DNA of 64,000 bases from Dendrobates tinctorius (lineage: Eukaryota): contig NW_027361819.1 in the NCBI RefSeq assembly GCF_039654945.1, forward strand, positions 4,588,001 to 4,652,000, in the 5' to 3' direction. Each line of letters opens with the position of its first letter. The stretch's first letter is position 1. Positions 26,326 to 64,000 of this stretch are shown here, piece after piece. The translations under genes were made by a program, and so were the position numbers. The notes below the pieces were generated by a model. That model saw nothing but the letters and a program-made list of their open reading frames with translations. It ran no database searches and was not told the DNA's origin.

Positions 26326-27996
26326 ATGTCTTCGGAGCAGCAGCAATCTTCAGGAGAGATTGAGGTGGCCATCGAGCAGGATCCTGAGGAGTCTCCCAGA
26401 TTTGTTCAGAGTGGACGTCGCTTTCGCTGTTTGTCCTGCCGCAAAACCTTCCCAAACCAGCCCCGTGCCAAGCGCCACTGTCGGGTGCACCTCTCAGCTG
26501 ATGACTCTCAGCCTCCGACCCCCAAGACTCAAGGGCCAAAAAGCGAGCAACGCCACCAGTGCGTACACTGCAACAAGTCCTACAAAACCGCCTCCCTGCT
26601 GAAGAGCCATGAGCGAAGCCACACAGGGGAGAAGCCGTTCGTGTGTAAAGAGTGCGGGCGCTCCTTCATGCAGCCCATATGCCTGCGGGTACACATGGCC
26701 ACACACAACGGGCAGCTCCCTTTCCAGTGCAGCCAGTGTGGAAAAGCTTACGCCACGCCGTCAAAGCTGCGGATCCACGAGCGGCTGCACACTGGGGAGC
26801 GCCCGTTCTCATGCCCTGATTGTGGGAAGGGGTTTGCCGACCCGTCTGTTTTTCGGAAGCACAGGCGGAGTCATGCCGGGCTGCGGCCTTATCAGTGCCA
26901 GCTGTGCCAGAAGTCATATAGCGAGCTGAAGGACCTAAAGAACCATGAACGGAGCCACACGGGGGAGAAGCCTTTCCTGTGTGCAGATTGCGGTAAGGCG
27001 TTCTCCCGCGCGTCTTCTCTAACGTGTCACCAGCGCATTCATGCTGCCGAGAAACCGTACAAGTGCCCTATATGTAACAAAGACTTTACCCAACTGTCCT
27101 CCTACCAGAGCCACCAACGCACACACTCCGGGGAGAAGCCTTACCTGTGCCCTCAGTGCGGCCGCATGTTCTCCGACCCATCTAGCTTCCGGCGGCACCA
27201 GCGGGCTCACCAGGGCGTGAAGCCGTACCGATGCGACAAGTGTGGCAAACCATTCCGGCAGCCGGCTGATTTGGCCATGCACCAGAGAATCCACACGGGT
27301 GAGAGGCCCTTCAAATGCCCGGACTGTGACAAGAGCTTTGTGGCCTCTTGGGACTTGAAGCGGCACCGGCTTTCGCACAGCACGGAGCGTCCCTTCCAGT
27401 GCATGGAATGTGGTAAAGGTTTCGCCGAGCGCTCCGGACTCAGCAAACACCAACGTTCCCACAGCGGAGAGAGACCCTACAAGTGCGAGGAGTGCAACAA
27501 GACGTTCATCGTCTCGTCAAGTCTGCGGAAGCACGAACGGACCCACGTGAAGCCCGAAGTGCAGGCCAACAAGAAGAAGGAAGAGTCCACCACCTGCGAT
27601 TCGTGCGCAGTGACCTTCCTGAGCGTGATGGACCTGAAGAACCATCAGAGAAACCATCCGGAGCTCAGGCCTTTCCGCTGTGACCAGTGTGACAAGGGCT
27701 TTGTGGACAAGGCCGGCCTGAAGAAGCACCAACGGATTCACAGCGACGTGCGCCCCCACATCTGCCAACAGTGCGGCAAGGGCTTCCACGTCCCCTCCGA
27801 CCTTCGTAAGCACCAGAAGACACATGACAAGGAGGTGAAGGGCAAAGAAGAGGAGGAGGAAGAGGAGATCACCACTTTGACCCTCCATCCGGCCTACGTA
27901 GAACCTCCGCCGCTCTTTGATCCTCTGGTCTCCTTCTTAGAGAAAGTGACCGAAGGAAACATGGAGGTGATAGAACAGTCGCCCACGTCGAGCTGA
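26326..27996 (+). CDS. ZNF668: Zinc finger protein 668 (16 C2H2 fingers, 556 aa)
   Basis: Acceptor tcttcttttccag|G at 26313/26314 and in-frame ATG at 26326. The N-terminal finger [23 protein letters not shown] resembles ZNF668, followed by TGEKP-linked fingers. Syntenic between ZNF646 and STX4. The track's first 98 codons are intronic. Confidence 0.92.
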
Positions 27997-32498: not shown

Positions 32499-33259
32499 TA
32501 ATACAAGATCTTTATATAAAAAAGAAACACTAAATGGAGCGGTCAGTGCGAGCTCCACGGACACGAGAAACCTCCAGCATTACAGGAGCCGGGACAGTCC
32601 ATGAGCATGCAGCAGCAGAATGCACGCTCACCTCGCCAAAGTGCAAGCTCCTCCCAAGTGACTGCTCCGGACACAGCCAGAGCTGCATTCACAATTCTGC
32701 CGCAGTGCGAGATGTAGGGTTTGATCCAGTAATGAGACTTGGAACACTACATTTCCCAGAGGGCCGTGCATCCTGGCATCTCAGGGGTGTAGACGGTGCT
32801 GACAGAGCCAGCCAAGTGGCGGCTGGAGCTGCGGCAGTGACCGACCGCTACACGATTTACACTGTAAAATACCGTATAAAAGTGAAGCCGCTCGTTACAT
32901 AAATTGCGCTAACAATTAAAAAGAAGAAAATGCAGCGACTGAGCGACCCCTCATCCCCCACACAATGTCATGGACGCCCATGCACCAGCAGGGGGCAGTG
33001 TATGGACCTGAGCGCACACGCCACGGCCGGGCTGTGTACAGGGATGGAGGCAGCGCCGCTCGCAGACTGACATCTATAATGGTAAAGTATAAGGCACACT
33101 TGGAAATCGCACACAGTGTCGGTGGTCAGTCACCACGCGAGGTCCGTTACCCTCCCCGAGCCCCAGCGGGGACCACCGGTCCTGTCCTCAGGAGCTACGC
33201 TGAGCGGGGAGCAGGATACAGAGATGTATGGGGTCGGGGGCACAGGGGTCCTCGTCCTC

Positions 33260-40899: not shown

Positions 40900-40992
40900 C
40901 TAAGGAAAGACACAAAGACACAATATGGGTGAGGAGAGGCGCCCCCTGCTGGTTATTATGCACATGACATCAGTCAGCAATGTCGCCGGTAC

Positions 40993-41091
40993 CATCCTGA
41001 AGAACTGGTGGTCCGTCTCGGATTCGTCTCTGCCGCCATTCGACATCGAGATGAAAACTTTCTGCTCATCGGGCTCAGAGTCGCTGTCACC
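40993..41091 (-). CDS. STX4: Syntaxin-4 coding exon 2 (GDSDSEPDEQ...HQFFRM)
   Basis: Acceptor ttgtttcag|, donor ATG|GTACCG, 99 nt, phase 0/0, acidic STX4-like segment. Confidence 0.88.
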
Positions 41092-41184
41092 CTGAAACAA
41101 AATGGTGGGTGAAGAATAAGTGACCAGAAACGGGAAAACCACCGAACACCAGGACAACGTGCAGCCCGGCAGAGGCGGGGCGCG

Positions 41185-44100
41185 CTGGGACGTGTAGTTC
41201 TGCAGAGGCGGGGCGCGCAGGGACGTGCAGTTCGTTCTGCGGGGAGCGCTGGGACGTGCAGTTCGTTCTGCGGGGAGCGCTGGGACGTGCAGTTCGTTCT
41301 GCGGGGAGCGCTGGGACGTGCAGTTCGTTCTGCGGGGAGCGCTGGGACGTGCAGTTCGTTCTGCGGGGAGCGCTGGGACGTGCAGTTCGTTCTGCTGGGA
41401 CGTGCAGTGCTGCGGGGGGCGCTGGGACGTGCAGTGCTGCGGGGGGCGCTGGGACGTGCAGTGCTGCGGGGGGCGCTGGGACGTGCAGTGCTGCGGGGGG
41501 CGCTGGGACGTGCAGTGCTGCGGGGGGCGCTGGGACGTGCAGTGCTGCGGGGGGCGCTGGGACGTGCAGTGCTGCTGGGACGTGCAGTGCTGCTGGGACG
41601 TGTAGTGCTGCGGGGGGTGCTGGGACGTGCAGTGCTGCTGGGACGTGCAGTGCTGCTGGGACGTGCGGGGGGCGCTGGGACGTGCAGTGCTGCGGGGGGC
41701 GCTGGGACGTGCAGTGCTGCGGGGGGCGCTGGGACGTGCAGTGCTGCGGGGGGCGCTGGGACGTGCAGTGCTGCGGGGGGCGCTGGGACGTGCAGTGCTG
41801 CGGGGGGCGCTGGGACGTGCAGTGCTGCGGGGGGCGCTGGGACGTGCAGTGCTGCGGGGGGCGCTGGGACGTGCAGTGCTGCGGGGGGCGCTGGGACGTG
41901 CAGTGCTGCGGGGGGCGCTGGGACGTGCAGTGCTGCGGGGGGCGCTGGGACGTGCAGTGCTGCGGGGGGCGCTGGGACGTGCAGTGCTGCGGGGGGCGCT
42001 GGGACGTGCAGTGCTGCGGGGGGCGCTGGGACGTGCAGTGCTGCGGGGGGCGCTGGGACGTGCAGTGCTGCGGGGGGCGCTGGGACGTGCAGTGCTGCTG
42101 GGACGTGTAGTGCTGCGGGGGGCGCTGGGACGTGTAGTGCTGCGGGGAGCGCTGGGACGTGTAGTGCTGCGGGGAGCGCTGGGACGTGTAGTGCTGCGGG
42201 GAGCGCTGGGACGTGTAGTGCTGCGGGGAGCGCTGGGACGTGTAGTGCTGCGGGGAGCGCTGGGACGTGCAGTGCTGCGGGGAGCGCTGGGACGTGCAGT
42301 GCTGCGGGGAGCGCTGGGACGTGTAGTGCTGCGGGGAGCGCTGGGACGTGTAGTTCCGCCGGGACGTGTAGTGCTGCGGGGGGCGCCGGGACGTGTAGTG
42401 CTGCGGGGGGCGCCGGGACGTGTAGTGCTGCGGGGGGAGCCGGGACGTGTAGTGCTGCGGGGGGCGCCGGGACGTGTAGTGCTGCTGGGACGTGTAGTGC
42501 TGCGGGGGGCGCTGGGACGTGTAGTCCTGCGGGGGGCGCTGGGACGTGTAGTCCTGCGGGGAGCGCTGGGACGTGTAGTCCTGCGGGGAGCGCTGGGACG
42601 TGTAGTCCTGCGGGGAGCGCTGGGACGTGTAGTCCTGCGGGGAGCGCTGGGACGTGTAGTGCTGCGGGGAGCGCTGGGACGTGTAGTGCTGCGGGGAGCG
42701 CTGGGACGTGTAGTGCTGCGGGGAGCGCTGGGACGTGTAGTGCTGCTGGGACGTGTAGTGCTGCGGGGAGCGCTGGGACTTGTAGTGCTGCGGGGGGCGC
42801 CGGGACGTGTAGTTCCGCTGGGACGTGTAGTGTTGCGGGGGGCGCCGGGACGTGTAGTTCCGCTGGGACGTGTAGTGCTGCGGGGGGCGCCGGGACGTGT
42901 AGTGCTGCGGGGGGCGCCGGGACGTGTAGTGCTGCGGGGGGCGCCGGGACGTGTAGTGCTGCGGGGGGCGCCGGGACGTGTAGTGCTGCGGGGGGCGCCG
43001 GGACGTGTAGTGCTGCGGGGGGCGCCGGGACGTGTAGTGCTGCGGGGGGCGCCGGGACGTGTAGTGCTGCGGGGGGCGCCGGGACGTGTAGTGCTGCTGG
43101 GACGTGTAGTGCTGCGGGGGGCGCTGGGACGTGTAGTGCTGCTGGGACGTGTAGTGCTGCGGGGGGCGCTGGGACGTGTAGTGCCGCTGGGACGTGTAGT
43201 GCTGCGGGGGGCGCCGGGACGTGTAGTGCCGCTGGGACGTGTAGTGCTGCGGGGGGCGCCGGGACGTGTAGTGCTGCGGGGGGCGCCGGGACGTGTAGTG
43301 CTGCGGGGGGCGCCGGGACGTGTAGTGCTGCGGGGGGCGCCGGGACGTGTAGTGCTGCGGGGGGCGCCGGGACGTGTAGTGCTGCGGGGGGCGCCGGGAC
43401 GTGTAGTGCTGCGGGGGGCGCCGGGACGTGTAGTGCTGCGGGGGGCGCCGGGACGTGTAGTGCTGCTGGGACGTGTAGTGCTGCGGGGGGCGCTGGGACG
43501 TGTAGTGCTGCTGGGACGTGTAGTGCTGCGGGGGGCGCTGGGACGTGTAGTGCTGCTGGGACGTGTAGTGCTGCGGGGGGCGCTGGGACGTGTAGTGCTG
43601 CTGGGACGTGTAGTGCTGCGGGGGGCGCCGGGACGTGTAGTGCTGCTGGGACGTGTAGTGCTGCGGGGGGCGCCGGGACGTGTAGTGCTGCGGGGGGCGC
43701 CGGGACGTGTAGTGCTGCGGGGGGCGCCGGGACGTGTAGTGCTGCGGGGGGCGCCGGGACGTGTAGTGCTGCGGGGGGCGCCGGGACGTGTAGTGCTGCG
43801 GGGGGCGCCGGGACGTGTAGTGCTGCGGGGGGCGCCGGGACGTGTAGTGCTGCGGGGGGCGCCGGGACGTGTAGTGCTGCGGGGGGCGCCGGGACGTGTA
43901 GTGCTGCGGGGGGCGCCGGGACGTGTAGTGCTGCGGGGGGCGCCGGGACGTGTAGTGCTGCGGGGGGCGCCGGGACGTGTAGTGCTGCGGGGGGCGCCGG
44001 GACGTGTAGTGCTGCGGGGGGCGCCGGGACGTGTAGTCCTGCGGGGGGCGCCGGGACGTGTAGTCCTGCGGGGGGCGCCGGGACGTGTAGTCCTGCGGGG

Positions 44101-47100
44101 GGCGCCGGGACGTGTAGTGCTGCGGGGGGCGCCGGGACGTGTAGTGCTGCGGGGGGCGCCGGGACGTGTAGTGCTGCGGGGGGCGCCGGGACGTGTAGTG
44201 CTGCGGGGGGCGCCGGGACGTGTAGTCCTGCGGGGGGCGCCGGGACGTGTAGTGCTGCGGGGGGCGCCGGGACGTGTAGTGCTGCGGGGGGCGCCGGGAC
44301 GTGTAGTGCTGCGGGGGGCGCCGGGACGTGTAGTGCTGCGGGGGGCGCCGGGACGTGTAGTGCTGCGGGGGGCGCCGGGACGTGTAGTGCTGCGGGGGGC
44401 GCCGGGACGTGTAGTGCTGCGGGGGGCGCCGGGACGTGTAGTGCTGCGGGGACGTGTAGTGCTGCGGGGGGCGCCGGGACGTGTAGTGCTGCTGGGACGT
44501 GTAGTGCTGCGGGGGGCGCTGGGACGTGTAGTGCTGCTGGGACGTGTAGTGCTGCGGGGGGCGCTGGGACGTGTAGTGCTGCTGGGACGTGTAGTGCTGC
44601 TGGGACGTGTAGTGCTGCGGGGGGCGCCGGGACGTGTAGTGCTGCTGGGACGTGTAGTGCTGCGGGGGGCGCCGGGACGTGTAGTGCTGCGGGGGGCGCC
44701 GGGACGTGTAGTGCTGCGGGGACGTGTAGTGCTGCGGGGGGCGCCGGGACGTGTAGTGCTGCGGGGGGCGCCGGGACGTGTAGTGCTGCGGGGGGCGCCG
44801 GGACGTGTAGTGCTGCGGGGGGCGCCGGGACGTGTAGTCCTGCGGGGGGCGCCGGGACGTGTAGTCCTGCGGGGGGCGCCGGGACGTGTAGTGCTGCGGG
44901 GGGCGCCGGGACGTGTAGTGCTGCGGGGGGCGCCGGGACGTGTAGTGCTGCGGGGGGCGCCGGGACGTGTAGTGCTGCGGGGGGCGCCGGGACGTGTAGT
45001 CCTGCGGGGGGCGCCGGGACGTGTAGTCCTGCGGGGGGCGCCGGGACGTGTAGTGCTGCGGGGGGCGCCGGGACGTGTAGTTCTGCGGGGGGCGCCGGGA
45101 CGTGTAGTGCTGCGGGGGGCGCCGGGACGTGTAGTCCTGCGGGGGGCGCCGGGACGTGTAGTCCTGCGGGGGGCGCCGGGACGTGTAGTCCTGCGGGGGG
45201 CGCCGGGACGTGTAGTGCTGCGGGGGGCGCCGGGACGTGTAGTGCTGCGGGGGGCGCCGGGACGTGTAGTGCTGCGGGGGGCGCCGGGACGTGTAGTGCT
45301 GCGGGGGGCGCCGGGACGTGTAGTGCTGCGGGGGGCGCCGGGACGTGTAGTGCTGCGGGGGGCGCCGGGACGTGTAGTGCTGCGGGGGGCGCCGGGACGT
45401 GTAGTGCTGCGGGGGGCGCCGGGACGTGTAGTCCTGCGGGGGGCGCCGGGACGTGTAGTGCTGCGGGGGGCGCCGGGACGTGTAGTGCTGCGGGGGGCGC
45501 CGGGACGTGTAGTGCTGCGGGGGGCGCCGGGACGTGTAGTGCTGCGGGGGGCGCCGGGACGTGTAGTGCTGCGGGGGGCGCCGGGACGTGTAGTGCTGCG
45601 GGGGGCGCCGGGACGTGTAGTGCTGCGGGGGGCGCCGGGACGTGTAGTCCTGCGGGGGGCGCCGGGACGTGTAGTGCTGCGGGGGGCGCCGGGACGTGTA
45701 GTGCTGCGGGGGGCGCCGGGACGTGTAGTGCTGCGGGGGGCGCCGGGACGTGTAGTCCTGCGGGGGGCGCCGGGACGTGTAGTCCTGCGGGGGGCGCCGG
45801 GACGTGTAGTCCTGCGGGGGGCGCCGGGACGTGTAGTCCTGCGGGGGGCGCCGGGACGTGCAGTGCTGCGGGGGGCGCCGGGACGTGCAGTGCTGCGGGG
45901 GGCGCCGGGACGTGCAGTGCTGCGGGGGGCGCCGGGACGTGCAGTCCTGCGGGGGGCGCCGGGACGTGCAGTGCTGCGGGGGGCGCCGGGACGTGCAGTG
46001 CTGCGGGGGGCGCCGGGACGTGCAGTGCTGCGGGGGGCGCTGGGACGTGCAGTGCTGCGGGGGGCGCTGGGACGTGCAGTGCTGCTGGGACGTGCAGTGC
46101 TGCTGGGACGTGTAGTGCTGCGGGGGGTGCTGGGACGTGCAGTGCTGCTGGGACGTGCAGTGCTGCTGGGACGTGCGGGGGGCGCTGGGACGTGCAGTGC
46201 TGCGGGGGGCGCTGGGACGTGCAGTGCTGCGGGGGGCGCTGGGACGTGCAGTGCTGCGGGGGGCGCTGGGACGTGCAGTGCTGCGGGGGGCGCTGGGACG
46301 TGCAGTGCTGCGGGGGGCGCTGGGACGTGCAGTGCTGCGGGGGGCGCTGGGACGTGCAGTGCTGCGGGGGGCGCTGGGACGTGCAGTGCTGCGGGGGGCG
46401 CTGGGACGTGCAGTGCTGCGGGGGGCGCTGGGACGTGCAGTGCTGCGGGGGGCGCTGGGACGTGCAGTGCTGCGGGGGGCGCTGGGACGTGCAGTGCTGC
46501 TGGGACGTGTAGTGCTGCGGGGGGCGCTGGGACGTGTAGTGCTGCGGGGAGCGCTGGGACGTGTAGTGCTGCGGGGAGCGCTGGGACGTGTAGTGCTGCG
46601 GGGAGCGCTGGGACGTGTAGTGCTGCGGGGAGCGCTGGGACGTGTAGTGCTGCGGGGAGCGCTGGGACGTGCAGTGCTGCGGGGAGCGCTGGGACGTGCA
46701 GTGCTGCGGGGAGCGCTGGGACGTGTAGTGCTGCGGGGAGCGCTGGGACGTGTAGTTCCGCCGGGACGTGTAGTGCTGCGGGGGGCGCCGGGACGTGTAG
46801 TGCTGCGGGGGGCGCCGGGACGTGTAGTGCTGCGGGGGGCGCCGGGACGTGTAGTGCTGCGGGGGGAGCCGGGACGTGTAGTGCTGCGGGGGGAGCCGGG
46901 ACGTGTAGTGCTGCTGGGACGTGTAGTGCTGCGGGGGGCGCTGGGACGTGTAGTCCTGCGGGGGGCGCTGGGACGTGTAGTCCTGCGGGGAGCGCTGGGA
47001 CGTGTAGTCCTGCGGGGAGCGCTGGGACGTGTAGTCCTGCGGGGAGCGCTGGGACGTGTAGTGCTGCGGGGAGCGCTGGGACGTGTAGTGCTGCGGGGAG

Positions 47101-50100
47101 CGCTGGGACGTGTAGTGCTGCGGGGAGCGCTGGGACGTGTAGTGCTGCGGGGAGCGCTGGGACGTGTAGTGCTGCTGGGACGTGTAGTGCTGCGGGGAGC
47201 GCTGGGACTTGTAGTGCTGCGGGGGGCGCCGGGACGTGTAGTTCCGCTGGGACGTGTAGTGTTGCGGGGGGCGCCGGGACGTGTAGTTCCGCTGGGACGT
47301 GTAGTGCTGCGGGGGGCGCCGGGACGTGTAGTGCTGCGGGGGGCGCCGGGACGTTTAGTGCTGCGGGGGGCGCCGGGACGTGTAGTGCTGCGGGGGGCGC
47401 CGGGACGTGTAGTGCTGCGGGGGGCGCCGGGACGTGTAGTGCTGCGGGGGGCGCCGGGACGTGTAGTGCTGCGGGGGGCGCCGGGACGTGTAGTGCTGCG
47501 GGGGGCGCCGGGACGTGTAGTGCTGCGGGGGGCGCCGGGACGTGTAGTGCTGCGGGGGGCGCCGGGACGTGTAGTGCTGCTGGGACGTGTAGTGCTGCGG
47601 GGGGCGCTGGGACGTGTAGTGCTGCTGGGACGTGTAGTGCTGCGGGGGGCGCTGGGACGTGTAGTGCCGCTGGGACGTGTAGTGCTGCGGGGGGCGCCGG
47701 GACGTGTAGTGCCGCTGGGACGTGTAGTGCTGCGGGGGGCGCCGGGACGTGTAGTGCCGCTGGGACGTGTAGTGCTGCGGGGGGCGCCGGGACGTGTAGT
47801 GCTGCGGGGGGCGCCGGGACGTGTAGTGCTGCGGGGGGCGCCGGGACGTGTAGTGCTGCGGGGGGCGCCGGGACGTGTAGTGCTGCGGGGGGCGCCGGGA
47901 CGTGTAGTGCTGCGGGGGGCGCCGGGACGTGTAGTGCTGCGGGGGGCGCCGGGACGTGTAGTGCTGCGGGGGGCGCCGGGACGTGTAGTGCTGCGGGGGG
48001 CGCCGGGACGTGTAGTGCTGCGGGGGGCGCCGGGACGTGTAGTGCTGCGGGGGGCGCCGGGACGTGTAGTGCTGCGGGGGGCGCCGGGACGTGTAGTCCT
48101 GCGGGGGGCGCCGGGACGTGTAGTCCTGCGGGGGGCGCCGGGACGTGTAGTCCTGCGGGGGGCGCCGGGACGTGTAGTCCTGCGGGGGGCGCCGGGACGT
48201 GTAGTCCTGCGGGGGGCGCCGGGACGTGTAGTCCTGCGGGGGGCGCCGGGACGTGTAGTCCTGCGGGGGGCGCCGGGACGTGTAGTGCTGCGGGGGGCGC
48301 CGGGACGTGTAGTGCTGCGGGGGGCGCCGGGACGTGTAGTGCTGCGGGGGGCGCCGGGACGTGTAGTCCTGCGGGGGGCGCCGGGACGTGTAGTGCTGCG
48401 GGGGGCGCCGGGACGTGTAGTGCTGCGGGGGGCGCCGGGACGTGTAGTGCTGCGGGGGGCGCCGGGACGTGTAGTGCTGCGGGGGGCGCCGGGACGTGTA
48501 GTGCTGCGGGGGGCGCCGGGACGTGTAGTGCTGCGGGGGGCGCCGGGACGTGTAGTGCTGCGGGGGGCGCCGGGACGTGTAGTGCTGCGGGGACGTGTAG
48601 TGCTGCGGGGGGCGCTGGGACGTGTAGTGCTGCTGGGACGTGTAGTGCTGCGGGGGGCGCTGGGACGTGTAGTGCTGCTGGGACGTGTAGTGCTGCGGGG
48701 GGCGCTGGGACGTGTAGTGCTGCTGGGACGTGTAGTGCTGCTGGGACGTGTAGTGCTGCGGGGGGCGCCGGGACGTGTAGTGCTGCTGGGACGTGTAGTG
48801 CTGCGGGGGGCGCCGGGACGTGTAGTGCTGCGGGGGGCGCCGGGACGTGTAGTGCTGCGGGGGGCGCCGGGACGTGTAGTGCTGCGGGGGGCGCCGGGAC
48901 GTGTAGTGCTGCGGGGGGCGCCGGGACGTGTAGTGCTGCGGGGGGCGCCGGGACGTGTAGTGCTGCGGGGGGCGCCGGGACGTGTAGTGCTGCGGGGGGC
49001 GCCGGGACGTGTAGTGCTGCGGGGGGCGCCGGGACGTGTAGTGCTGCGGGGGGCGCCGGGACGTGTAGTGCTGCGGGGGGCGCCGGGACGTGTAGTGCTG
49101 CGGGGGGCGCCGGGACGTGTAGTCCTGCGGGGGGCGCCGGGACGTGTAGTCCTGCGGGGGGCGCCGGGACGTGTAGTCCTGCGGGGGGCGCCGGGACGTG
49201 TAGTGCTGCGGGGGGCGCCGGGACGTGTAGTCCTGCGGGGGGCGCCGGGACGTGTAGTCCTGCGGGGGGCGCCGGGACGTGTAGTGCTGCGGGGGGCGCC
49301 GGGACGTGTAGTTCTGCGGGGGGCGCCGGGACGTGTAGTGCTGCGGGGGGCGCCGGGACGTGTAGTGCTGCGGGGGGCGCCGGGACGTGTAGTGCTGCGG
49401 GGGGCGCCGGGACGTGTAGTGCTGCGGGGGGCGCCGGGACGTGTAGTGCTGCGGGGGGCGCTGGGACGTGTAGTGCTGCGGGGAGCGCTGGGACGTGTAG
49501 TCCTGCGGGGGGTGCTGGGACGTGTAGTGCTGCTGGGACGTGTAGTGCTGCGGGGGGCGCTGGGACGTGTAGTCCTGCGGGGGGCGCTGGGACGTGTAGT
49601 GCTGCGGGGAGCGCTGGGACGTGTAGTCCTGCGGGGGGTGCTGGGACGTGTAGTGCTGCTGGGACGTGTAGTGCTGCGGGGGGCGCTGGGACGTGTAGTC
49701 CTGCGGGGGGCGCTGGGACGTGTAGTGCTGCGGGGGGCGCTGGGACGTGTAGTCCTGCGGGGGGCGCTGGGACGTGTAGTGCTGCGGGGGGCGCTGGGAC
49801 GTGTAGTGCTGCGGGGGGCGCTGGGACGTGTAGTCCTGCGGGGGGCGCTGGGACGTGTAGTGCTGCGGGGGGCGCTGGGACGTGTAGTGCTGCGGGGGGC
49901 GCTGGGACGTGTAGTCCTGCGGGGGGCGCTGGGACGTGTAGTGCTGCGGGGGGCGCTGGGACGTGTAGTGCTGCGGGGGGCGCTGGGACGTGTAGTGCTG
50001 CGGGGGGCGCTGGGACGTGTAGTGCTGCGGGGGGGGCGCTGGGACGTGTAGTGCTGCGGGGGGCGCTGGGACGTGTAGTCCTGCGGGGGGCGCTGGGACG

Positions 50101-50190
50101 TGTAGTCCTGCGGGGGGCGCTGGGACGTGTAGTGCTGCGGGGGGCGCTGGGACGTGTAGTTCTGCGGGGGGCGCTGGGACGTGTAGTCCT
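41185..50190. repeat. ~9-kb CpG-rich 27-bp minisatellite (18-bp and 31-bp variants) filling STX4 intron 1
   Basis: Unit gggacgtgtagtgctgcggggggcgc(c/t), short unit gggacgtgtagtgctgct, 31-bp lead-in at 41221-41395. Over 300 units by length. Confidence 0.97.
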
Positions 50191-50246
50191 CCTCCCGGGT
50201 GGTCGGTCCGGCCGCTGTCCCCCATCGCCCCCTGCCGGCCGCTCAC

Positions 50247-50276
50247 CTGGGTCAGCTCCTTGGTCCGGTCCCTCAT
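50247..50276 (-). CDS. STX4: Syntaxin-4 coding exon 1 (MRDRTKELTQ)
   Basis: Syntaxin N-peptide MRDRT, 30 nt, donor CAG|GTGAGC. Confidence 0.93.
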
Positions 50277-50329
50277 TCTGCCTCCGGATTCTGCGTCCCC
50301 CCCCACTCTTGATCACTTCTCACAACTTT

Positions 50330-50690
50330 TACTTCCACCGCTACTGCGCATGCTCGGCCCCGGCCACGCCCACTGCACCCTTCCTGCGGCTGAAGAGCCA
50401 TAGAGGCGAGCGGGAGCCAGCGCGGAGGATGCTGGGATACTGGAGGACCGGAGCGGCCCGGTTTCACGGAGCGGGGTAATGGCGGGAGCGCGGGCCGAGG
50501 ACAAGCAATGGTTTATAATAAACATGTCCGGGCTCTCATTTATAATGTTTTTATAGTACAAAATAATGATGACGTCATCTGACCGCTGACGGCTGTGATT
50601 GGCTGCGTAGGTCAGGTGACTTCTCCAAGTCACATGGTCTGAGCAGAGGCTGTAGTGGTCAGGTGACTGAGGAACAAGACGTCATGGCTA
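50330..50690 (-). promoter_or_regulatory. STX4 promoter region
   Basis: CpG-rich. NRF1-like TGCGCATGCTC 50345, SP/KLF GGCCACGCCC 50361, CRE TGACGTCA 50570, CCAAT (ATTGG 50598), E-boxes GTCAGGTGAC 50611 and 50658, GTCACATGG 50629. Confidence 0.7.
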
Positions 50691-50691
50691 A

Positions 50692-51002
50692 GGCTATGTG
50701 CACACACTGCGGAATCACCTGCGGGTTTTTCCCCGCGGAACCGCAGGTAAAGTGACCTTCAGTTTTCCCCTGTGGTTTCACATCTCTACTATGTTAAAGG
50801 TGTGAAACCGCAGCGGAATCCGCAGAAACAATTGACATGCTGCGGTTTAAAAACCGTGCGGAAAAAACACAGCGTGAGCCCTGCAGTTTTGAAAACCCAT
50901 AGGGTTACACGGTGCTGTACCTTGTCAGCGGAACTGCTGCGGTTCCACAGGGCCAAAACCGCAGAGTAACCGCAGCAAAAACCGCAGCGTGTGCACACAG
51001 CC
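50692..51002. mobile_element. PIF/Harbinger-type MITE just upstream of the STX4 promoter
   Basis: TAA|GGCTATGTGCACACACTGCGG ... CCGCAGCGTGTGCACACAGCC|TTA: inverted termini with TWA flanks. Confidence 0.85.
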
Positions 51003-54000
51003 TTACTGTGCTCTGGAGCCCTCCGGAGCGGCCATTACTGGGGCCGAGAGCCGCCAGTGTTCTCCTGTGATAGATGACCCCTTTAAGGCCATTGCTTCAA
51101 TAATGCCTGAGTCTTATGTTGTGGAGACGCCGATGAGAAAACGCCAGAAAACCCCCCAGGACGAGGCGCAGTGACGGAGGGTCTCCAGTATCGCCTCACA
51201 GGAGCCTCCGCAGCAGTGACCAGCACACAGGGGGTTACACGACATTGATGACCCACCGGTCGCCACAGCCCCCTGTACTGGCCGCTCCCAGCTACTGCAC
51301 AATAGAACGGCCACTTCATGGCGCTGTGCTGATCACGGGGGCCGGGACTCTCCTAAGGACAGGTCGTCAGAATCACATAACTGGAGAACCCTTCTAATAC
51401 ACCCTGTCCATTGTCCTGTGCTCACAGTCATGGCTGACCCGTATGTGACGTCATCACCCATCAGTGACTCCTCTGTCCTCTCCACACCCCATGTACCCCC
51501 ACTCAGACTCCTGAGACCACTCTGCTCCCATCCTGACTCCCCTGTCCTCTCCACACCCCATGTACCCCCACTCAGACTCCTGAGACCACTCTGCTCCCAT
51601 CCTGACTCCCCTGTCCTCTCCACACCCCATGTACCCCCACTCAGACTCCTGAGAGCCCTCTGCTCCCATCCTGACTCCTCTGTCCTCTCCACACCCCATG
51701 TACCCCCACTCAGACTCCTGAGACCCCTCTGCTCCCATCCTGACTCCTCTGTCCTCTCCACACCCCATGTACCCCCACTCAGACTCCTGAGACCCCTCTG
51801 CTCCCATCCTGACTCCTCTGTCCTCTGCACCCCCCCATGTACCCCCATTCAGACTCTTGAGACCCCTCTGCTCCCATCCTGACTCTTCTGTCCTCTCCAC
51901 ACCCCATGTACCCCCACTCAGACTCCTGAGACCCCTCTGCTCCCATCCTGACTCCTCTGTCCTCTCCACACCCCATGTACCCCCACTCAGATACCTGAGA
52001 CTCCTCTGCTCCCATCCTGACTCCTCTATCCTCTCCACACCCCATGTACCCCTATCCAGACTCCTGAGACCCCTCTGCTCCCATCCTGACTCCTCTGTCC
52101 TCTCTACACCCCTATGTACACCCATTCAGATTCCTGAGACCCCTCTGCTCCCATCCTGACTCCTCTGTCCTCTCCACACCCCGTGTACCCCCATTCAGAC
52201 TCCTGAGACCCCTCTGCTCCCATCCTGACTCCTCTGTCCTCTCCACCCCCCCATGTACCCCCATTCAGACTCCTGAGACCCCTCTGCTCCCATCCTGACT
52301 CTTCTGTCCTCTCCACCCCCCATGTAGCCCCCACTCAGACTCCTGAGACCCCTCTGCTCCCATCCTGACTCCTATCCTTTCCACACCCCATGTACCCCCA
52401 CTCAGACTCCTGAGACCCCTCTGCTCCCATCCTGACTCTTCTGTCCTCTCCACACCCCATGTACCCCCACTCAGACTCCTGAGACCCCTCTGCTCCCATC
52501 CTGACTCCTCTGTCCTCTCCACCCCTCCATGTACCCCCATTCAGACTCCTGAGAGCCCTCTGCTCCCATCCTGACTCCTCTGTCCTCTCCACACCCCATG
52601 TACCCCCACTCAGATACCTGAGACTCCTCTGCTCCCATCCTGACTCCTCTATCCTCTCCACACCCCATGTACCCCCACTCAGACTCCTGAGACCACTCTG
52701 CTCCCATCCTGACTCCCCTGTCCTCTCCACACCCCATGTACCCCCACTCAGACTCCTGAGACCACTCTGCTCCCATCCTGACTCCCCTGTCCTCTCCACA
52801 CCCCATGTACCCCCACTCAGACTCCTGGGACCACTCTGCTCCCATCCTGACTCCTCTGTCCTCTCCACACCCCATGTACCCCCACTCAGACTCCTGAGAC
52901 CCCTCTGCTCCCATCCTGACTCCTCTGTCCTCTCCACCCCTCCATGTACCCCCATTCAGACTCCTGAGACCCCTCTGCTCCCATCCTGACTCCTCTGTCC
53001 TCTCCACACCCCTATGTACACCCATTCAGATTCCTGAGACCCCTCTGCTCCCATCCTGACTCCCCTGTCCTCTCCACACCCCATGTACCCCCACTCAGAC
53101 TCCTGAGACCACTCTGCTCCCATCCTGACTCCTCTGTCCTCTCCACACCCCATGTACCCCCATTCAGATTCCTGAGACCCCTCTGCTCCCATCCTGACTC
53201 CTCTGTCCTCTCCACACCCCATGTACCCCCATTCAGACTCCTGAGATCCCTCTGCTCCCATCCTGACTCCTCTGTCCTCTCCACCCCCCCATGTACCCCC
53301 ATTCTGACTCCTGAGACCCCTCTGCTTCCATCCTGACTCTTCTGTCCTCTCCACCCCCCATGTAGCCCCCACTCAGACTCCTGAGACCCCTCTGCTCCCA
53401 TCCTGACTCCTCTATCCTCTCCACACCCCATGTACCCCCACTCAGACTCCTGAGACCACTCTGCTCCCATCCTGACTCCTCTGTCCTCTCCACACCCCAT
53501 GTACCCCCACTCAGACTCCTGAGACCCCTCTGCTCCCATCCTGACTCCTCTGTCCTCTCCACCCCTCCATGTACCCCCATTCAGACTCCTGAGACCCCTC
53601 TGCTCCCATCCTGACTCCTCTGTCCTCTCCACACCCCTATGTACACCCATTCAGATTCCTGAGACCCCTCTGATCCCATCCTGACTCCCCTGTCCTCTCC
53701 ACACCCCATGTACCCCCAATCAGACTCCTGAGACCCCTCTGCTCCCATCCTGACTCTTCTATCCTCTCCACCCCCCACGTAGCCCCCATTCAGACTCCTG
53801 AGACCTCTCTGCTCCCATCCTGACTCCTCTACTCTGTCCTCTCCACACCCCATGTACCCCCACTCAGACTCCTGAGACCCCTCTGCTCCCATCCTGACTC
53901 CTCTGTCCTCTCCACACCCCATGTACCCCCACTCAGACTCCTGAAACCCCTCTGCTCCCATCCTGACTCCTCTGTCCTCTCCACACCCCATGTACCCCCA

Positions 54001-55285
54001 CTCAGACTCCTGAGACCCCTCTGCTCCCATCCTGACTCCTCTGTCCTCTCCACACCCCATGTACCCCCACTCAGACTCCTGAGACCCCTCTGCTCCCATC
54101 CTGACTCCTCTGTCCTCTCCACCCCCCATGTACCCCCACTCAGACTCCTGAGACCCCTCTGCTCCCATCCTGACTCCTCTGTCCTCTCCACCCCCCACGT
54201 AGCCCCCATTCAGACTCCTGAGACCTCTCTGCTCCCATCCTGACTCCTCTGTCCTCTCCACACCCCATGTACCCCCATTCAGACTCCTGAGATCCCTCTG
54301 CTCCCATCCTGACTCCTCTGTCCTCTCCACCCCCCATGTACCCCCATTCTGACTCCTGAGACCCCTCTGCTCCCATCCTGACTCTTCTGTCCTCTCCACC
54401 CCCCATGTAGCCCCCACTCAGACTCCTGAGACCCCTCTGCTCCCATCCTGACTCCTCTATCCTCTCCACACCCCATGTACCCCCACTCAGACTCCTGAGA
54501 CCACTCTGCTCCCATCCTGACTCCTCTGTCCTCTCCACACCCCATGTACCCCCACTCAGACTCCTGAGACCCCTCTGCTCCCATCCTGACTCCTCTGTCC
54601 TCTCCACCCCTCCATGTACCCCCATTCAGACTCCTGAGACCCCTCTGCTCCCATCCTGACTCCTCTGTCCTCTCCACACCCCTATGTACACCCATTCAGA
54701 TTCCTGAGACCCCTCTGATCCCATCCTGACTCCCCTGTCCTCTCCACACCCCATGTACCCCCAATCAGACTCCTGAGACCCCTCTGCTCCCATCCTGACT
54801 CTTCTATCCTCTCCACCCCCCACGTAGCCCCCATTCAGACTCCTGAGACCTCTCTGCTCCCATCCTGACTCCTCTACTCTATCCTCTCCACACCCCATGT
54901 ACCCCCACTCAGACTCCTGAGACCCCTCTGCTCCCATCCTGACTCCTCTGTCCTCTCCACACCCCATGTACCCCCACTCAGACTCCTGAGACCCCTCTGC
55001 TCCCATCCTGACTCCTCTGTCCTCTCCACACCCCATGTACCCCCACTCAGACTCCTGAGACCCCTCTGCTCCCATCCTGACTCCTCTGTCCTCTCCACAC
55101 CCCATGTACCCCCACTCAGACTCCTGAGACCCCTCTGCTCCCATCCTGACTCCTCTGTCCTCTCCACACCCCTATATAGATTCAAAGAAGCTTTATTGGC
55201 AGGACTAAATACACATTAGTTTTGCCAAAGTAAGTGTACAAAAGGGAGTAGGGATAGGGACTGTAGGGATGTTGGGTAGGGGCAG

Positions 55286-57614: not shown

Positions 57615-60600
57615 AGGCCTTGATTCTAGGTACGAGGGAAGTAGCCGGCACTTAGCACAATATTGAAGAGTTTAACCATTGCGGCCTGTATTTCTGGTGG
57701 GCTGTACTTTAGCATTTCTGGTGGGATTCCATCCAGGCCTCCAGCTTGTCTACATCTTATGGAAGAGATTCTCTCTGCTACTTCCTGTAATGTAATAGGT
57801 GCATCCACGGGGTTTTGGAAATTTTTTACTTTTTCCTCCATTGCTTTTAGTTTTGCCATTATGCTTTCCTGTTCTTGGCTTAGTTCTTCCTTTGGAATGT
57901 CTTTATAGAGGTCTCTGAAGTACTGGAGCCAGATGTTGCCATTTTGGATATGGATGTTGTTTTTCTTGTCTTTTGTGCCCATGTGGTTCCATAGTTCCCA
58001 GAAGGAGTTGTCTTGGAGGGCATCTTGGAGTTGGATAAGCTTGGTAGAGATGTAACTCTGCTTCTTCCTCCTGAGGATGGTTTTGTACTGCCTCTGTATG
58101 GTGTCATAGGCTTCCCTCAGACCCGGGTGGTTGGGGTCTCTGTGTTTCTTGTTTGAGGCTGTTCTCAGGGTCTTCCGTACGGCTTTACATTCTCTGTCAA
58201 ACCATCCATTGATCTGTTTTTCTTTTGGTCTCTTGTAGTTGACTTTTTTAAGGTCGGACAGTCTGGCCATTGCATAGAATATATTGTTGAGGTCTTTGGC
58301 AGCTTGACTCACTCCCTTTGGGTTAGGCTGGTACTCGTAGTTGTAGAAGTGGTGGAGCATCCGCTGTATTTCAGGTCTGCTGGGAGCCTCTTTATACTTT
58401 AATGCCGACATTTTGTGCCATTTATAGGATGGAGGCCGGGTGAAGAGGCCGCTCTGCTGAGGCTTTTGAGTGGATGGTTTCTCTGTAGATTTCAGGTACA
58501 GAAGAAGTTGGTTGTGGTCTGACAGGTGCGTTTGTGGGGAGACTATGAAGGCGCTGATATTTGCCAGGTTCATATCTGTAATGGCATAATCTACGACACT
58601 CCTCCCTACATGGGAGTTTAGTGTGCACCTCCCTAAGGTGTCTCCTTTGGTTCGTCCGTTAAGAATATGAAGTCCTAAACTTCTGCATACGTTCAGGAGC
58701 TTTTTACCACTTTTGTTGACTGTACTGTCATAGCTGTTTCTCTCTGTGACTACTGAGTCTTGGCCATTATTCTCTGCTCCAAATATGTAGATGTTCCCAT
58801 CCGTGGTCAGGAAGTCGTTTTCTCTCCCTGTTCTTGCATTGAGGTCTCCAAAGATGAGAACTTTGCCCAGGCCCTGATAGTGGGCGGCTTCTCTTTGTAA
58901 GATCTCGAAGCAGTCTGGATTGAAGTAGGGTGACTCTGGCGGTGGTATATAGGTGGCGCAGAGGTGGACATCAGACTGAGAGGTGAGGATGGAGCTGCTG
59001 ATCCTGATCCATATGTGGCTGCCTCCTCTCTTCACCGGTTTGATGTACTGGTGGAGCTCCTCTTTATGCCAGATCAGTATTCCTCCTGAGCTCCGGCCCT
59101 GTTTGATGTTTTTATTTTTCAGGGCAGGGACAGAGATTTCCCTGTATCCGATGGGCACCAGAGATTCGTCTTCGGCTCTCGTCCATGTTTCCAGGAGGAT
59201 CTGAATGTCTATATTTCTCAGTCTTTCTATAAAGTCAGGGTCATTTGTTTTACATCCAAAGGCCGAGGTGTTGAGACCCTGAATATTCCAGCTGCTGATT
59301 GTAAGTGAGGTCATTTTTCTATATATCTTGGGTGTATATACCTTGTAATGAGTATGGCTGTGTAGGACACACCGGATCTCTGTTTTGTTGATGTGCTTGG
59401 TTCCGTCCAGTCACATTAGTTTCCTGCATAGTGCACTGAGCAGGTTTGTTATCTCATCCATATCTCTGCATGTATCTGTGTGTGGTCGGTGGACTCCTCC
59501 GTGGAGGTCTCCTCCTCTGATGGTCTGATTTTGGGTGAAGAGCTTTGTTTCCAGCTTCTGGAGACAGGATTGGGGTTTTCGGCCTTTTTATTGTTCGGGG
59601 TCTTTCAGTGTGATTCTGGTCACTGTTGAGTCCAGGCCTCGGTCCTCTGTTCAGTACAATGTCAGCTCTTTGGCCAGGAGGCTGACCCCTTGTTTGTTGA
59701 GGTGCTTATTATCATACAGGTGATGGTGGGTTATGGAAAGGTGTGGTGCCAGGGTCACGTTTGGAACAGTCTTGACCCTTTCTGTCAGTTCCATATTGAT
59801 GCTTTGGGTGGTTTGCCTGGATATGTCCTTTGTTGGGAGCAGAGATGACAGAATGATTTTGCTGTCTGGGAATTTTAGTTTTGCCGTCTTTGCTAATTGG
59901 ATAAGTTGTCCTGCGATCTGCTGGTGCTGGTCTGGCAGATTGTACCCGTGTGTATGGTGATATGGTTTGGGTTGGTAAACCGTGGATTACTGATGACCTC
60001 TGTCACCTGTTCAATAGTTGCACAGCGAACTTTTGGGGCCCGTTTTCGGAGAATAGCCGTTGTGTATTTAGGTACTTCCCATTTGAGTCCATTATTAGGA
60101 CAATATCAGGACTTTGTGGTGTCTGGGGTGGGCTGAGTGGCTGCTGATGGGGGTCTGTGATGCTGGCTTTGCTGGTGGTTGGTTCTCTTCTCTCTTCCAT
60201 CTCTCTGGTTTCTGGTTCACTTTTATTGGTTTCAGGATTGGTCGTATTGGTTATTGTTGTGCTGTTATTTGGCATCTCCACATTCTGGTCGGTGGAGGCC
60301 ATGTTGTCTGCTCTCAGGTTTGTTTCCATTGCCCCCTGCTGGGTCAGATGTCCAGGGGTCTGTGTTTTTAGTTCTGCAATCTCCTTTCTGAGTCTTTCAT
60401 TGTCATTTTGCAATTCACGCATTTCTTCTCATTTTCTGTAGAGCTGACTTGTACTCGCATTTCAGTTTATTGATCTCTATATCCCCCATCCAGACTCCTG
60501 AGACCGCTCTGCTCCCATCCTGACTCCTCTGTCCTCTCCACCCCCCCATGTACCCCCATCTAGACTCCTGAGACTCCTCTGCTCCCATCCTGACTCCTCT

Positions 60601-63600: not shown

Positions 63601-64000
63601 TCCTGAGACCCCTCTGTTCCCATCCTGACTCCTCTGTTCTCACCACTCCCCTATATATCCTCTTCCAGACTCCTGAGACCCCTCTACTCCCATCCTGACT
63701 CCTCTGTCCTCTCCACACCCCATATGTGCCCCCCATCCAGACTCCTGAGACCCCTCTGTTCCCATCCTGACTCCTCTGTCCTCTCCACCCCCCATGTACC
63801 CCCATCCAGACTCCTGAGACCCCTCTGTTCCCATCCTGACTCCTCCCTCTCCACCCCCATGTACCCCCCATCCAGACTCCTGAGACCCTTCTGCTCCCAT
63901 CTTGAATCCTCTGTCCTCTCCCATCCATATACCCCCACCCAGACTCCTGAGACCCCTCTTGCTCCCATCCTGACTCCTCTATCCTCTCCCACCCATGTAC

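What the first reader, a model, noticed from the sequence alone, without database searches (positions are those of the whole stretch)
41185..50190. STX4 intron 1 is a 9-kb multimer of the ZNF143/THAP11 promoter motif
Seen: on the sense (minus) strand most units read (C/G/A)ACTACACGTCCC(A/G)GC. A single GAACTACACGTCCCAGC next to GC boxes at the array edge (~41185-41200) looks like the seed copy. The array begins ~55 nt after the exon 1 donor. Known: ACTACAnnTCCC(AG) is the extended SBS/M4 element bound by ZNF143 with THAP11-HCFC1, normally present as one or a few copies at CpG-island promoters. Inference: an ordinary promoter-proximal site has been amplified to hundreds of copies, creating a possible copy-number-tunable enhancer, factor sink or methylation switch. 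Each motif contains a CpG and an ACGTG (HRE-type core). Blocks of GTGCAG units break the motif, so binding may be patterned along the array.
Basis: partly seen in the sequence, partly recalled or inferred. Interest (0 to 1): 0.75.

Follow-up and report, generated by a model that had tools for sequence, protein, structure and literature searches.

The report
Ancient promoter-motif minisatellite in frog STX4
Intron 1 of the syntaxin-4 gene of the dyeing poison frog is almost entirely a 9-kb tandem array of a THAP11/ZNF143-type promoter motif; the array grew from a site that is single-copy in more distant frogs and has stayed at this spot in six hyloid frog families, so it is an unusually old, possibly functional repeat.

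Summary
Window 41174-50187 (minus strand) holds 345 head-to-tail units, mostly 27 bp. Of these, 285 read ACTACACGTCCC. The M4 motif occurs 285 times against 0.93 expected by chance. The window is identical to Dendrobates tinctorius GCA_039654945.1. Orthologous proteins and spliced RNA contigs show the array fills STX4 intron 1, starting 59 nt after the exon 1 donor.

Pseudophryne has one copy at this place and Eleutherodactylus coqui has two. Rana has one copy beside the donor plus five in larger repeats. Hyla, Bufo, Engystomops, Anomaloglossus, Ranitomeya and Phyllobates carry arrays of 27-110 units. The units share one phase, which points to a single origin. The core GGACTACAnnTCCCAGC is identical across lineages, while the spacers and unit lengths (27-43 bp) diverge.

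The ancestral unit was a full SBS2 site (ZNF143 plus THAP11). In D. tinctorius, AT-to-GC changes destroyed the ZNF143 half. About 110 units keep an intact THAP11 site, and 28 of them lie at the promoter end. The CpG/ACGTG feature is derived.

Protein binding, methylation and any copy-number effect remain untested. Earlier first-stage notes of this scan report similar arrays elsewhere in this genome; I could not check them.

The parts
41174..50187 (-). Minisatellite of 345 units. The main form is 27 bp, ACTACACGTCCC(G/A)GCGCCCCCCGCAG(C/G). 47 units are an 18-bp form lacking GCCCCCCGC. GC is 74.8% and CpG o/e is 1.10.
49448..50187 (-). Promoter-proximal block of 28 consecutive units with an intact THAP11-type site (ACTACAnnTCCCA).
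46030..48810 (-). Copy 1 of a large internal duplication of the array (approximate ends). It has the same order of unit variants as copy 2, with different run lengths.
41400..44670 (-). Copy 2 of the internal duplication (approximate ends). It ends in blocks of ACTGCA units that break the motif.
41174..41390 (-). 3' edge of the array: five 31-bp units, then two longer units with a GCGCGCCCCGCCTCTGC spacer resembling the 33-bp units of Ranitomeya and Phyllobates.
41092..50246 (-). STX4 intron 1, 9155 nt: a 59-nt 5' flank, the array, and an 82-nt 3' flank with the polypyrimidine tract and acceptor.
50247..50383 (-). STX4 exon 1. The ATG is at 50274-50276, followed by 10 codons (MRDRTKELTQ). The RNA-supported 5' end is near 50383, where a cDNA fragment runs into sequencing adapter.
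40993..41091 (-). STX4 exon 2 (33 codons, GDSDSEPDEQKVFISMSNGGRDESETDHQFFRM).
50421..50439 (-). SBS1-type Staf/ZNF143 site of the core promoter (TATCCCAGCATCCTCCGCG), about 40-55 nt upstream of the RNA 5' end. The block is conserved in all 12 frogs aligned.

Best explanation
What it is. This is an old, recombination-driven minisatellite seeded from a real promoter-proximal SBS2/M4 element. SBS2/M4 is the composite site bound in mammals by ZNF143 and by THAP11 with HCFC1.

Shown:
- Neobatrachian frogs carry an ACTACAnnTCCCAGCATGC-type site in the sense strand of STX4 intron 1, 27-100 nt after the exon 1 donor and roughly 150-200 nt downstream of the transcription start.
- Before the hyloid families diverged, a segment of about 37-38 bp holding this site was duplicated head to tail.
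- The array has persisted at this spot since then, with 2 to 345 copies and unit lengths of 27-43 bp.
- The 15 specified core bases stayed identical in every lineage consensus except D. tinctorius, while the spacers changed.
- In dendrobatids, AT-to-GC changes removed the ZNF143 half. In D. tinctorius they also converted TCCCA to TCCCG in half the units.
- In D. tinctorius the array grew to 9 kb, partly through a duplication of about 3 kb inside the array.

Inferred mechanism:
- Frogs lack PRDM9, so recombination starts at promoters and CpG islands.
- STX4 lies in the long, GC-rich, recombination-rich distal part of frog chromosomes.
- Unequal exchange there builds arrays, and GC-biased conversion raises their GC content.

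Inferred function:
- The conserved core means the copies, at least the promoter-proximal ones, are kept as docking sites for THAP11-HCFC1, and for ZNF143 where the full site survives. They would act as part of the STX4 promoter and as an extension of its unmethylated CpG island.
- Most of the 9 kb in this species is a tolerated by-product that is spliced out.
For: - Array anatomy and motif counts.
- Identity of the window with D. tinctorius STX4.
- The intron is spliced out in RNA-type contigs.
- Orthologous introns: one sense-strand copy near the donor in Pseudophryne; one beside the donor plus five in 119-bp repeats in Rana; two in E. coqui; 27-110 units in six other hyloids; none in Discoglossus or Spea.
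- The unit junction GTAGG|ACTACA and a 37-38 bp unit are shared by E. coqui, Hyla and Bufo; Engystomops and Ranitomeya share the junction.
- Core identity is 15/15 in every pair of lineage consensus units except pairs with D. tinctorius (13/15). The rest of the unit is about 76% identical, plus indels.
- Between families, blastn aligns only the promoter, the exons and short stretches beside them, and this array. No other intronic array aligns.
- A single relic copy next to the donor has lost TCCC in Engystomops, Hyla and E. coqui, while the array copies kept it.
- Engystomops units match 17/18 positions of the published SBS consensus plus ACTACA (consensus from PMC5006282 and PMC3627581).
- The STX4 core promoter also carries a deeply conserved SBS1 site.
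- All derived dendrobatid changes run from A/T to G/C.
- CpG o/e is 1.10.
- The gene lies within the terminal 1-25 Mb of the record in 9 of 10 chromosome-scale records.
- Frogs lack PRDM9 and have recombination-rich, GC-rich, repeat-rich subtelomeres (PMC10794172, PMC5519329).
Against: - No binding, chromatin or methylation data exist for any frog here.
- Copy number ranges from 2 to 345 and non-hyloids manage with one copy, so the array as such is not needed for STX4.
- In D. tinctorius and Phyllobates most units have lost the canonical site. In D. tinctorius the ZNF143 half is gone everywhere.
- Within arrays, core positions are not consistently less variable than spacer positions: the difference is significant in 2 of 7 species.
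- Half the window is made of unrelated minisatellites. Discoglossus amplified a motif-free unit at the same place. Array formation here therefore needs no motif-specific cause.
- The pairwise conservation counts are not phylogenetically independent.
- Array length rests on one assembly.
Confidence: 0.7

Rival explanations
1. Wholly neutral minisatellite. The promoter-proximal site was caught up in the general tandem-repeat proliferation of frog subtelomeres. The core looks conserved only because of shared descent, slow frog substitution rates and array homogenisation. No copy beyond perhaps the first has any function.
For: - 49% of the window is minisatellite.
- Discoglossus has a motif-free 30-bp array at the same intron position.
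- Copy number and unit length vary widely, and the motif decays in dendrobatids.
- E. coqui keeps only two copies and lies farthest from a chromosome end.
- Tandem repeat expansion by unequal crossing over is the published norm for frog subtelomeres (PMC10794172).
Against: - The core is 15/15 identical across six lineages, while the adjoining spacer of the same units is about 76% identical with indels.
- The non-array relic copy lost TCCC in three families.
- No other intronic array is shared between families.
Confidence: 0.25
2. Copy-number-dependent regulatory array. The multimer itself is the selected unit. It would act as a high-avidity platform or local sink for THAP11-HCFC1/ZNF143 that tunes STX4 initiation, or as a roadblock or internal-initiation zone.
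For: - The array state is retained in 7 of 8 hyloids across six families, with the core conserved.
- Intact sites cluster at the promoter end.
- ZNF143 ChIP signal rises with the number of SBS2 motifs (PMC3627581).
- ZNF143 bound downstream of a start site can block polymerase or start bidirectional transcription (PMC11754675).
Against: - There is no dosage evidence.
- Copy number ranges 170-fold between species with the same gene.
- The ZNF143 half is lost in D. tinctorius.
- STX4 mRNA is spliced normally and was assembled at high contig depth in one RNA-type run.
Confidence: 0.15
3. Part of the 9 kb is an assembly artefact. On this reading the two blocks of about 3 kb with the same variant order are one block assembled twice.
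For: The order of unit variants is duplicated at an offset of 4.1-4.5 kb. Only one assembly was available, and the short-read contigs laid on it cannot span the array.
Against: The two copies differ in many run lengths (for example 11 versus 15 B units, and 4 versus 3 F units). They are separated by unique variant blocks. This pattern fits real duplication followed by divergence. Even halved, the array would remain the largest one sampled.
Confidence: 0.08
4. The array is a hypoxia-response or bHLH (ACGTG/CACGT) site multimer, or acts as an intronic RNA element rather than through the M4 motif.
For: Every D. tinctorius unit holds ACGTG on the + strand and a central CpG.
Against: - The ACG is derived. 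Pseudophryne, E. coqui and Hyla read ACATGT, Bufo ACATAT and Engystomops ACATCT at this place.
- There is no Rfam match.
- Folding is no better than shuffled sequence, with z-scores of 0.5 and 0.9.
Confidence: 0.02

Closest known systems
SBS2 / M4 composite promoter element (ZNF143/Staf with THAP11-HCFC1)
   Same: ACTACA plus TCCCAG at the canonical spacing, in the sense strand, within a few hundred bp of a transcription start in a CpG island. The orthologous units of Engystomops, Bufo and E. coqui match the full 25-bp SBS2 (PMC3627581, PMC5006282).
   Different: Known sites occur once or a few times per promoter. Here there are 27-345 back-to-back copies running up to 9 kb into an intron. In D. 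tinctorius the ZNF143 half is lost and two thirds of the units depart from ACTACAnnTCCCA.
Subtelomeric minisatellites of frogs expanded by unequal crossing over (for example the 52-bp SINE/tRNA-V-derived array of pipids; PMC10794172)
   Same: GC-rich units of tens of bp in the distal chromosome region, many arrays per locus, lineage-specific unit lengths, and probably the same expansion mechanism.
   Different: Those arrays differ between frog groups and derive from transposon parts. This one derives from a gene's own regulatory site and has been kept at an orthologous position across six families.
Transcription-factor-binding VNTRs and microsatellite enhancers (INS VNTR, MAOA uVNTR, GGAA repeats bound by EWS-FLI). 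Named from general knowledge, not tested here.
   Same: A tandem repeat near a promoter whose unit is a factor binding site, with copy number as a possible expression dial.
   Different: Those are young, polymorphic within species and not conserved between families. Their factors differ. No expression link is known here.
Xenopus rDNA spacer 60/81-bp enhancer repeats. Named from general knowledge, not tested here.
   Same: A piece of a promoter duplicated into a tandem array next to the promoter it came from, in frogs. It is thought to work by loading the promoter's own factor.
   Different: That is a Pol I system with UBF, and the array lies upstream of the promoter. Here it is a Pol II gene, the array lies downstream and it is transcribed as an intron.

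Membership tests
SBS2 / M4 element (THAP11-HCFC1 / ZNF143 site) | ACTAYR module (ACTACA) | tested here: met
   285 of 345 units have it. 60 units read ACTGCA and fail.
SBS2 / M4 element (THAP11-HCFC1 / ZNF143 site) | THAP11 binding site ACTACANNTCCCA | tested here: inconclusive
   Met in 109 of 345 units. 173 units read TCCCG, which still fits M4 ACTAYRNNNCCCR but not the THAP11 consensus of PMC3627581.
SBS2 / M4 element (THAP11-HCFC1 / ZNF143 site) | ZNF143 half, positions MATSCMYYRCR of the 18-bp SBS | tested here: not met
   In D. tinctorius the central AT is GC in all units, and there are no SBS core matches in the intron. The feature is met in the orthologous arrays: 46 of about 54 Engystomops units match by regex, and the consensus units of Bufo and E. 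coqui match.
SBS2 / M4 element (THAP11-HCFC1 / ZNF143 site) | Position within about 500 bp of a transcription start | tested here: inconclusive
   The first unit lies about 196 nt downstream of the RNA-supported 5' end at about 50383. Only about the first 11 units lie within 500 bp.
SBS2 / M4 element (THAP11-HCFC1 / ZNF143 site) | Occupancy by THAP11, HCFC1 or ZNF143 | not testable with these tools
   No frog ChIP or CUT&RUN data are within reach.
Minisatellite / VNTR | Head-to-tail units of 10-100 bp with interspersed variant units | tested here: met
   27-bp period, 29 unit variants in blocks, and a large internal duplication.
Minisatellite / VNTR | Length variation between individuals | not testable with these tools
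   Only short-read contigs were available. Length differs greatly between species.
CpG island | GC above 55%, CpG o/e above 0.6, length above 500 bp | tested here: met
   GC 74.8%, CpG o/e 1.10 and 12.7 CpG per 100 bp over 9 kb, contiguous with the promoter.
CpG island | Unmethylated in the germline | not testable with these tools
   Only inferred from the lack of CpG depletion.
Transposon-derived satellite | Unit matches part of a mobile element found elsewhere | tested here: inconclusive
   The unit traces to a single-copy orthologous site in Pseudophryne, not to a repeat, and no Rfam family matches. No transposon library was available.

The most novel reading that the evidence does not exclude
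Hyloid frogs may maintain, under selection, tandem arrays of SBS2/M4 sites just downstream of transcription starts as a distinct class of regulatory element. STX4 would be one of several such loci; unchecked first-stage notes report 0.4-23 kb arrays of the same motif type beside other promoters in this genome. Many THAP11-HCFC1/ZNF143 sites would form a high-avidity hub that keeps a long CpG island open, and copy number would tune output.
Probability: 0.15. Interest if true: 0.8.

Novelty: new variant of a known kind. Interest (0 to 1): 0.6.

Why it matters
Minisatellites are usually short-lived and lineage-specific. Here one sits at the same intron position in six frog families, with unit lengths from 27 to 43 bp, and the 15 specified bases of a known promoter motif are unchanged in the consensus unit of every sampled lineage except D. 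tinctorius, which differs at two. That offers a natural experiment on three questions: whether multiplying a transcription factor site matters, how arrays turn over under constraint, and how promoter-targeted recombination in animals without PRDM9 reshapes promoters. The series runs from 1 to 345 copies, with and without the ZNF143 half, and so gives ready-made material for reporter and binding tests. If it proves neutral, it is still a clean, dated example of a regulatory site seeding a 9-kb intron.

Tried and rejected
- Word search with the neighbouring 654-aa C2H2 zinc-finger ORF, to find orthologous loci. It returned only generic zinc-finger hits. The route that worked was a stop-free reference ending in exon 2 with the 'region' option.
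- Position weight matrices for ZNF143 and THAP11 were not available offline. I used the published IUPAC consensus sequences instead.
- Within-array test of whether core positions vary less than spacer positions. It was significant only in D. tinctorius and Engystomops and was driven by length variants, so I do not use it as evidence.
- Hairpin-driven slippage. Four units folded as single-stranded DNA are no more stable than shuffles on either strand, with z-scores of 0.46 and 0.92.
- G-quadruplex on the G-rich template strand. No G4 pattern with loops of 12 nt or less occurs in the array.
- Known RNA families in the intron and promoter: none.
- The HRE/E-box reading is rejected because the ACG is derived.
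- Four literature searches for tandem arrays of ZNF143/THAP11 motifs found nothing relevant. The library lacks many subscription papers, so this is weak evidence of absence.
- The other motif arrays noted earlier in this genome could not be read, because only this window and the fetched loci are accessible.
- Every run offered was held only as assembled contigs, so transcription starts, expression levels and array length could not be measured.
Full report
**1. The observation**

Tandem Repeats Finder reports one array at 41397-50187 with period 27 and 336 copies. Splitting the sense (minus) strand at the motif gives 345 units between 50187 and 41174. About 285-290 units are 27 bp. 47 units are 18 bp and lack GCCCCCCGC. 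A few 31-37 bp units sit at the 3' edge.

- 285 units read ACTACACGTCCC, and 60 read ACTGCACGTCCC and lie in blocks. All are on the minus strand.
- The M4 consensus ACTAYRNNNCCCR occurs 285 times in the window against 0.93 expected from shuffles.
- The array is 74.8% GC with CpG o/e of 1.10.
- It contains a large internal duplication. Two blocks of about 3 kb (about 46030-48810 and 41400-44670) carry the same order of unit variants with different run lengths.

**2. The gene and the organism**

Exon 1 (MRDRTKELTQ, 50247-50276) and exon 2 (40993-41091) lie on the minus strand. A search seeded on exon 2 found syntaxin-4 of four dendrobatoid frogs and Engystomops. The fetched Dendrobates tinctorius locus (GCA_039654945.1, contig JAYMGB010000173.1) is identical to the window over 20 kb. 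The window is therefore D. tinctorius STX4.

Contigs of public runs confirm the intron:
- A 1771-nt RNA-type contig matches 50246-50373 without a difference and leaves the genome at the donor.
- A second run's contig leaves at the same place, and its overhang reads the first 11 nt of exon 2.
- A cDNA fragment runs into sequencing adapter at 50383. This suggests a 5' end there.

Intron 1 is 9155 nt: a 59-nt flank, the array, and an 82-nt flank. The first unit lies about 196 nt downstream of the RNA 5' end.

**3. What the motif is**

Published work defines three sites (PMC3627581, PMC5006282):
- the 18-bp ZNF143/Staf site SBS1 (YWCCCRNMATSCMYYRCR);
- the 25-bp SBS2, which is SBS1 preceded by ACTACAN;
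- the THAP11 site ACTACANNTCCCA.

ZNF143's DNA-binding domain does not bind the THAP11 site alone, but THAP11's does. The ACTAYR module recruits THAP11 and HCF-1.

The whole D. tinctorius 27-mer lines up with SBS2, but the central AT of ATGC is GC in every unit. The ZNF143 half therefore fails. 109 units keep ACTACAnnTCCCA, 173 read TCCCG and 60 read ACTGCA. The intact units are not scattered. The 28 units nearest the promoter are all intact.

**4. Orthologous introns**

I fetched STX4 from eleven other frogs and located intron 1 in each. The table gives results; taxonomy is.

| Species | Family or group | Motif state in intron 1 |
|---|---|---|
| Spea | non-neobatrachian | no M4 site |
| Discoglossus | non-neobatrachian | no M4 site; a motif-free 30-bp array that repeats the splice donor |
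| Pseudophryne | Myobatrachidae | one intact site 52 nt after the donor, plus two stray M4-type matches (one antisense) more than 1 kb into the intron |
| Rana | Ranidae | one site 27 nt after the donor, plus five in 119-bp repeats |
| Eleutherodactylus coqui | Eleutherodactylidae (hyloid) | two 37-bp units |
| Hyla | Hylidae | 38 bp x 75 |
| Bufo | Bufonidae | 38 bp x 66 |
| Engystomops | Leptodactylidae | 43 bp x 54 |
| Anomaloglossus | Aromobatidae | 34-35 bp x 110 |
| Ranitomeya | Dendrobatidae | 33 bp x 60 |
| Phyllobates | Dendrobatidae | 33 bp x 27 |

All arrays are in the sense strand and start 40-150 nt after the donor.

The units of E. coqui, Hyla, Bufo, Engystomops and Ranitomeya share the junction GTAGG|ACTACA. 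In Pseudophryne the single-copy sequence from ACTACA to TGTAG is about as long as one unit. The simplest reading is a single duplication before the hyloid families diverged. From general knowledge that divergence was several tens of millions of years ago; I did not date it here.

**5. Conservation of the core**

- In the alignment of lineage consensus units, GGACTACAnnTCCCAGC holds all the invariant columns. The rest of the unit has none.
- Every pair of lineages except those involving D. tinctorius is identical at 15/15 specified core positions. The rest of the unit is about 76% identical at aligned positions, plus indels. For the four non-dendrobatid hyloid families the counts are 90/90 against 92/121. 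These pairs are not independent, so the p-values overstate the case.
- Between families, blastn aligns only the promoter, the exons and short stretches beside them, and this array. The other arrays of the same introns are lineage-specific.
- A lone relic copy right after the donor in Engystomops, Hyla and E. coqui has lost TCCC (TCACA, TGACA, GAACA), while the array copies kept it.

These points favour constraint on the motif in the array. Within-array diversity does not add support.

**6. The ancestral unit and its decay**

Engystomops units (ACTACATCTCCCAGCATGCCCTGC) match 17/18 SBS positions plus ACTACA. Bufo and E. coqui are similar. The founder was therefore a full ZNF143 plus THAP11 site.

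The STX4 core promoter also holds an SBS1-type block, CCTCCAGTATCCCRGCATGCYCCGCGCC. It is conserved in all twelve frogs and lies at 50421-50439 in the window. STX4 thus looks like an old ZNF143-type promoter.

In dendrobatids the derived changes all run from A/T to G/C:
- ACATG to ACACG;
- CATGC to CGCGC or CGCCC;
- CCCAGC to CCCGGC;
- ACTACA to ACTGCA.

The 3' edge of the D. tinctorius array keeps 31-33-bp units like those of Ranitomeya. Contigs of two other, coded organisms (identities hidden by the run search) that match the first units carry 6-7 extra letters per unit. The 27-mer is therefore a recent deletion form that swept the interior.

**7. Mechanism**

Amphibians lack PRDM9 (PMC5519329). 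Frog chromosomes have long distal regions with high recombination, high GC and many tandem repeats. These repeats are attributed to unequal crossing over (PMC10794172).

STX4 lies 1-25 Mb from the end of the record in nine of ten chromosome-scale assemblies. The exception is E. coqui at 39 Mb, which is also the hyloid with only two copies. Half of this window is minisatellite.

I infer that promoter-targeted recombination plus unequal exchange built and resizes the array. I also infer that GC-biased conversion explains the AT-to-GC drift and the undepleted CpGs. Hairpins and G-quadruplexes gave no support.

**8. Function**

Nothing here shows protein binding. I rate it about two in three that at least the proximal units bind THAP11-HCFC1 in vivo, and ZNF143 where the full site survives. 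I rate it about one in six that copy number itself matters.

In mammals, ZNF143 ChIP signal rises with the number of SBS2 motifs (PMC3627581). ZNF143 bound downstream of a start can block polymerase or start bidirectional transcription (PMC11754675). The full-site arrays of Engystomops and Bufo are therefore the best places to look for an effect.

**9. Novelty**

Four literature searches found no report of tandem arrays of this motif. First-stage notes of this scan list at least five further arrays of ZNF143/THAP11-type motifs beside promoters in the same genome. I could not read those places, so they are leads only.

I class the finding as a new variant of a known kind: a minisatellite bearing a factor binding site, here unusually old and conserved.

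Noticed in passing
window 50421-50439 (-); L001-L012 promoters: The STX4 core promoter carries an SBS1-type Staf/ZNF143 site, CCTCCAGTATCCCRGCATGCYCCGCGCC, conserved in all 12 frogs from Discoglossus and Spea to dendrobatids. Further conserved blocks follow it: GCCGCAGGAAGGGTGCAGTGGGCGTGG and an NRF1-like GAGCATGCGCAGT at 50345-50353.
   Followed up: partly
L011 3031-4939 (Discoglossus pictus): A 30-bp x 64 minisatellite starts exactly at the exon 1 donor of STX4 and repeats the GTGAGT donor itself. That gives dozens of potential donor sites in a row. No M4 motif is present.
   Followed up: no
L010 3058-4100 (Rana temporaria): The M4-like site ACTACAGGGCCCAGCATGG sits 27 nt after the donor. 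It recurs five times inside 119-bp/245-bp repeat units, apparently a separate amplification with a larger unit.
   Followed up: partly
window 50688-51001: A 314-bp MITE-like element full of CTGCGG/CCGCAG repeats lies in the STX4 upstream region. It is missing from a roughly 97%-identical contig of another labelled organism (run X9) and is present at very high depth in all four runs.
   Followed up: no
window 32746-32758 (+): A single canonical ACTACATTTCCCAG lies about 0.5 kb beyond the STX4 stop codon, antisense to STX4. An antisense M4 hit stands at a similar distance beyond the gene in Ranitomeya and Phyllobates but is absent from the other families. It may be an unannotated start site.
   Followed up: no
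window 1-64000: About 31 kb (49%) of the window is covered by at least 18 unrelated minisatellites with periods of 22-92 bp. These include 69-bp arrays on both sides of a gap at 51457-55172 and 60483-64000, and several arrays inside other STX4 introns.
   Followed up: partly
window 26032-27996 (+): A 654-aa single-exon C2H2 zinc-finger ORF with about 14 fingers lies next to STX4. It gave only generic zinc-finger hits, so its orthology is not established.
   Followed up: partly
window 40903-50316 (-): A stop-free frame of 3138 codons runs through the whole array and into exon 2. It is a mechanical result of the 27-bp (9-codon) period, not evidence of coding. It is not in frame with the exon 1 start codon.
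   Followed up: partly
L005 6480-8530 (Engystomops pustulosus): A second, unrelated 38-bp x 54 array directly follows the SBS2 array and fills the rest of intron 1 up to the acceptor. It has no counterpart in the other species.
   Followed up: no
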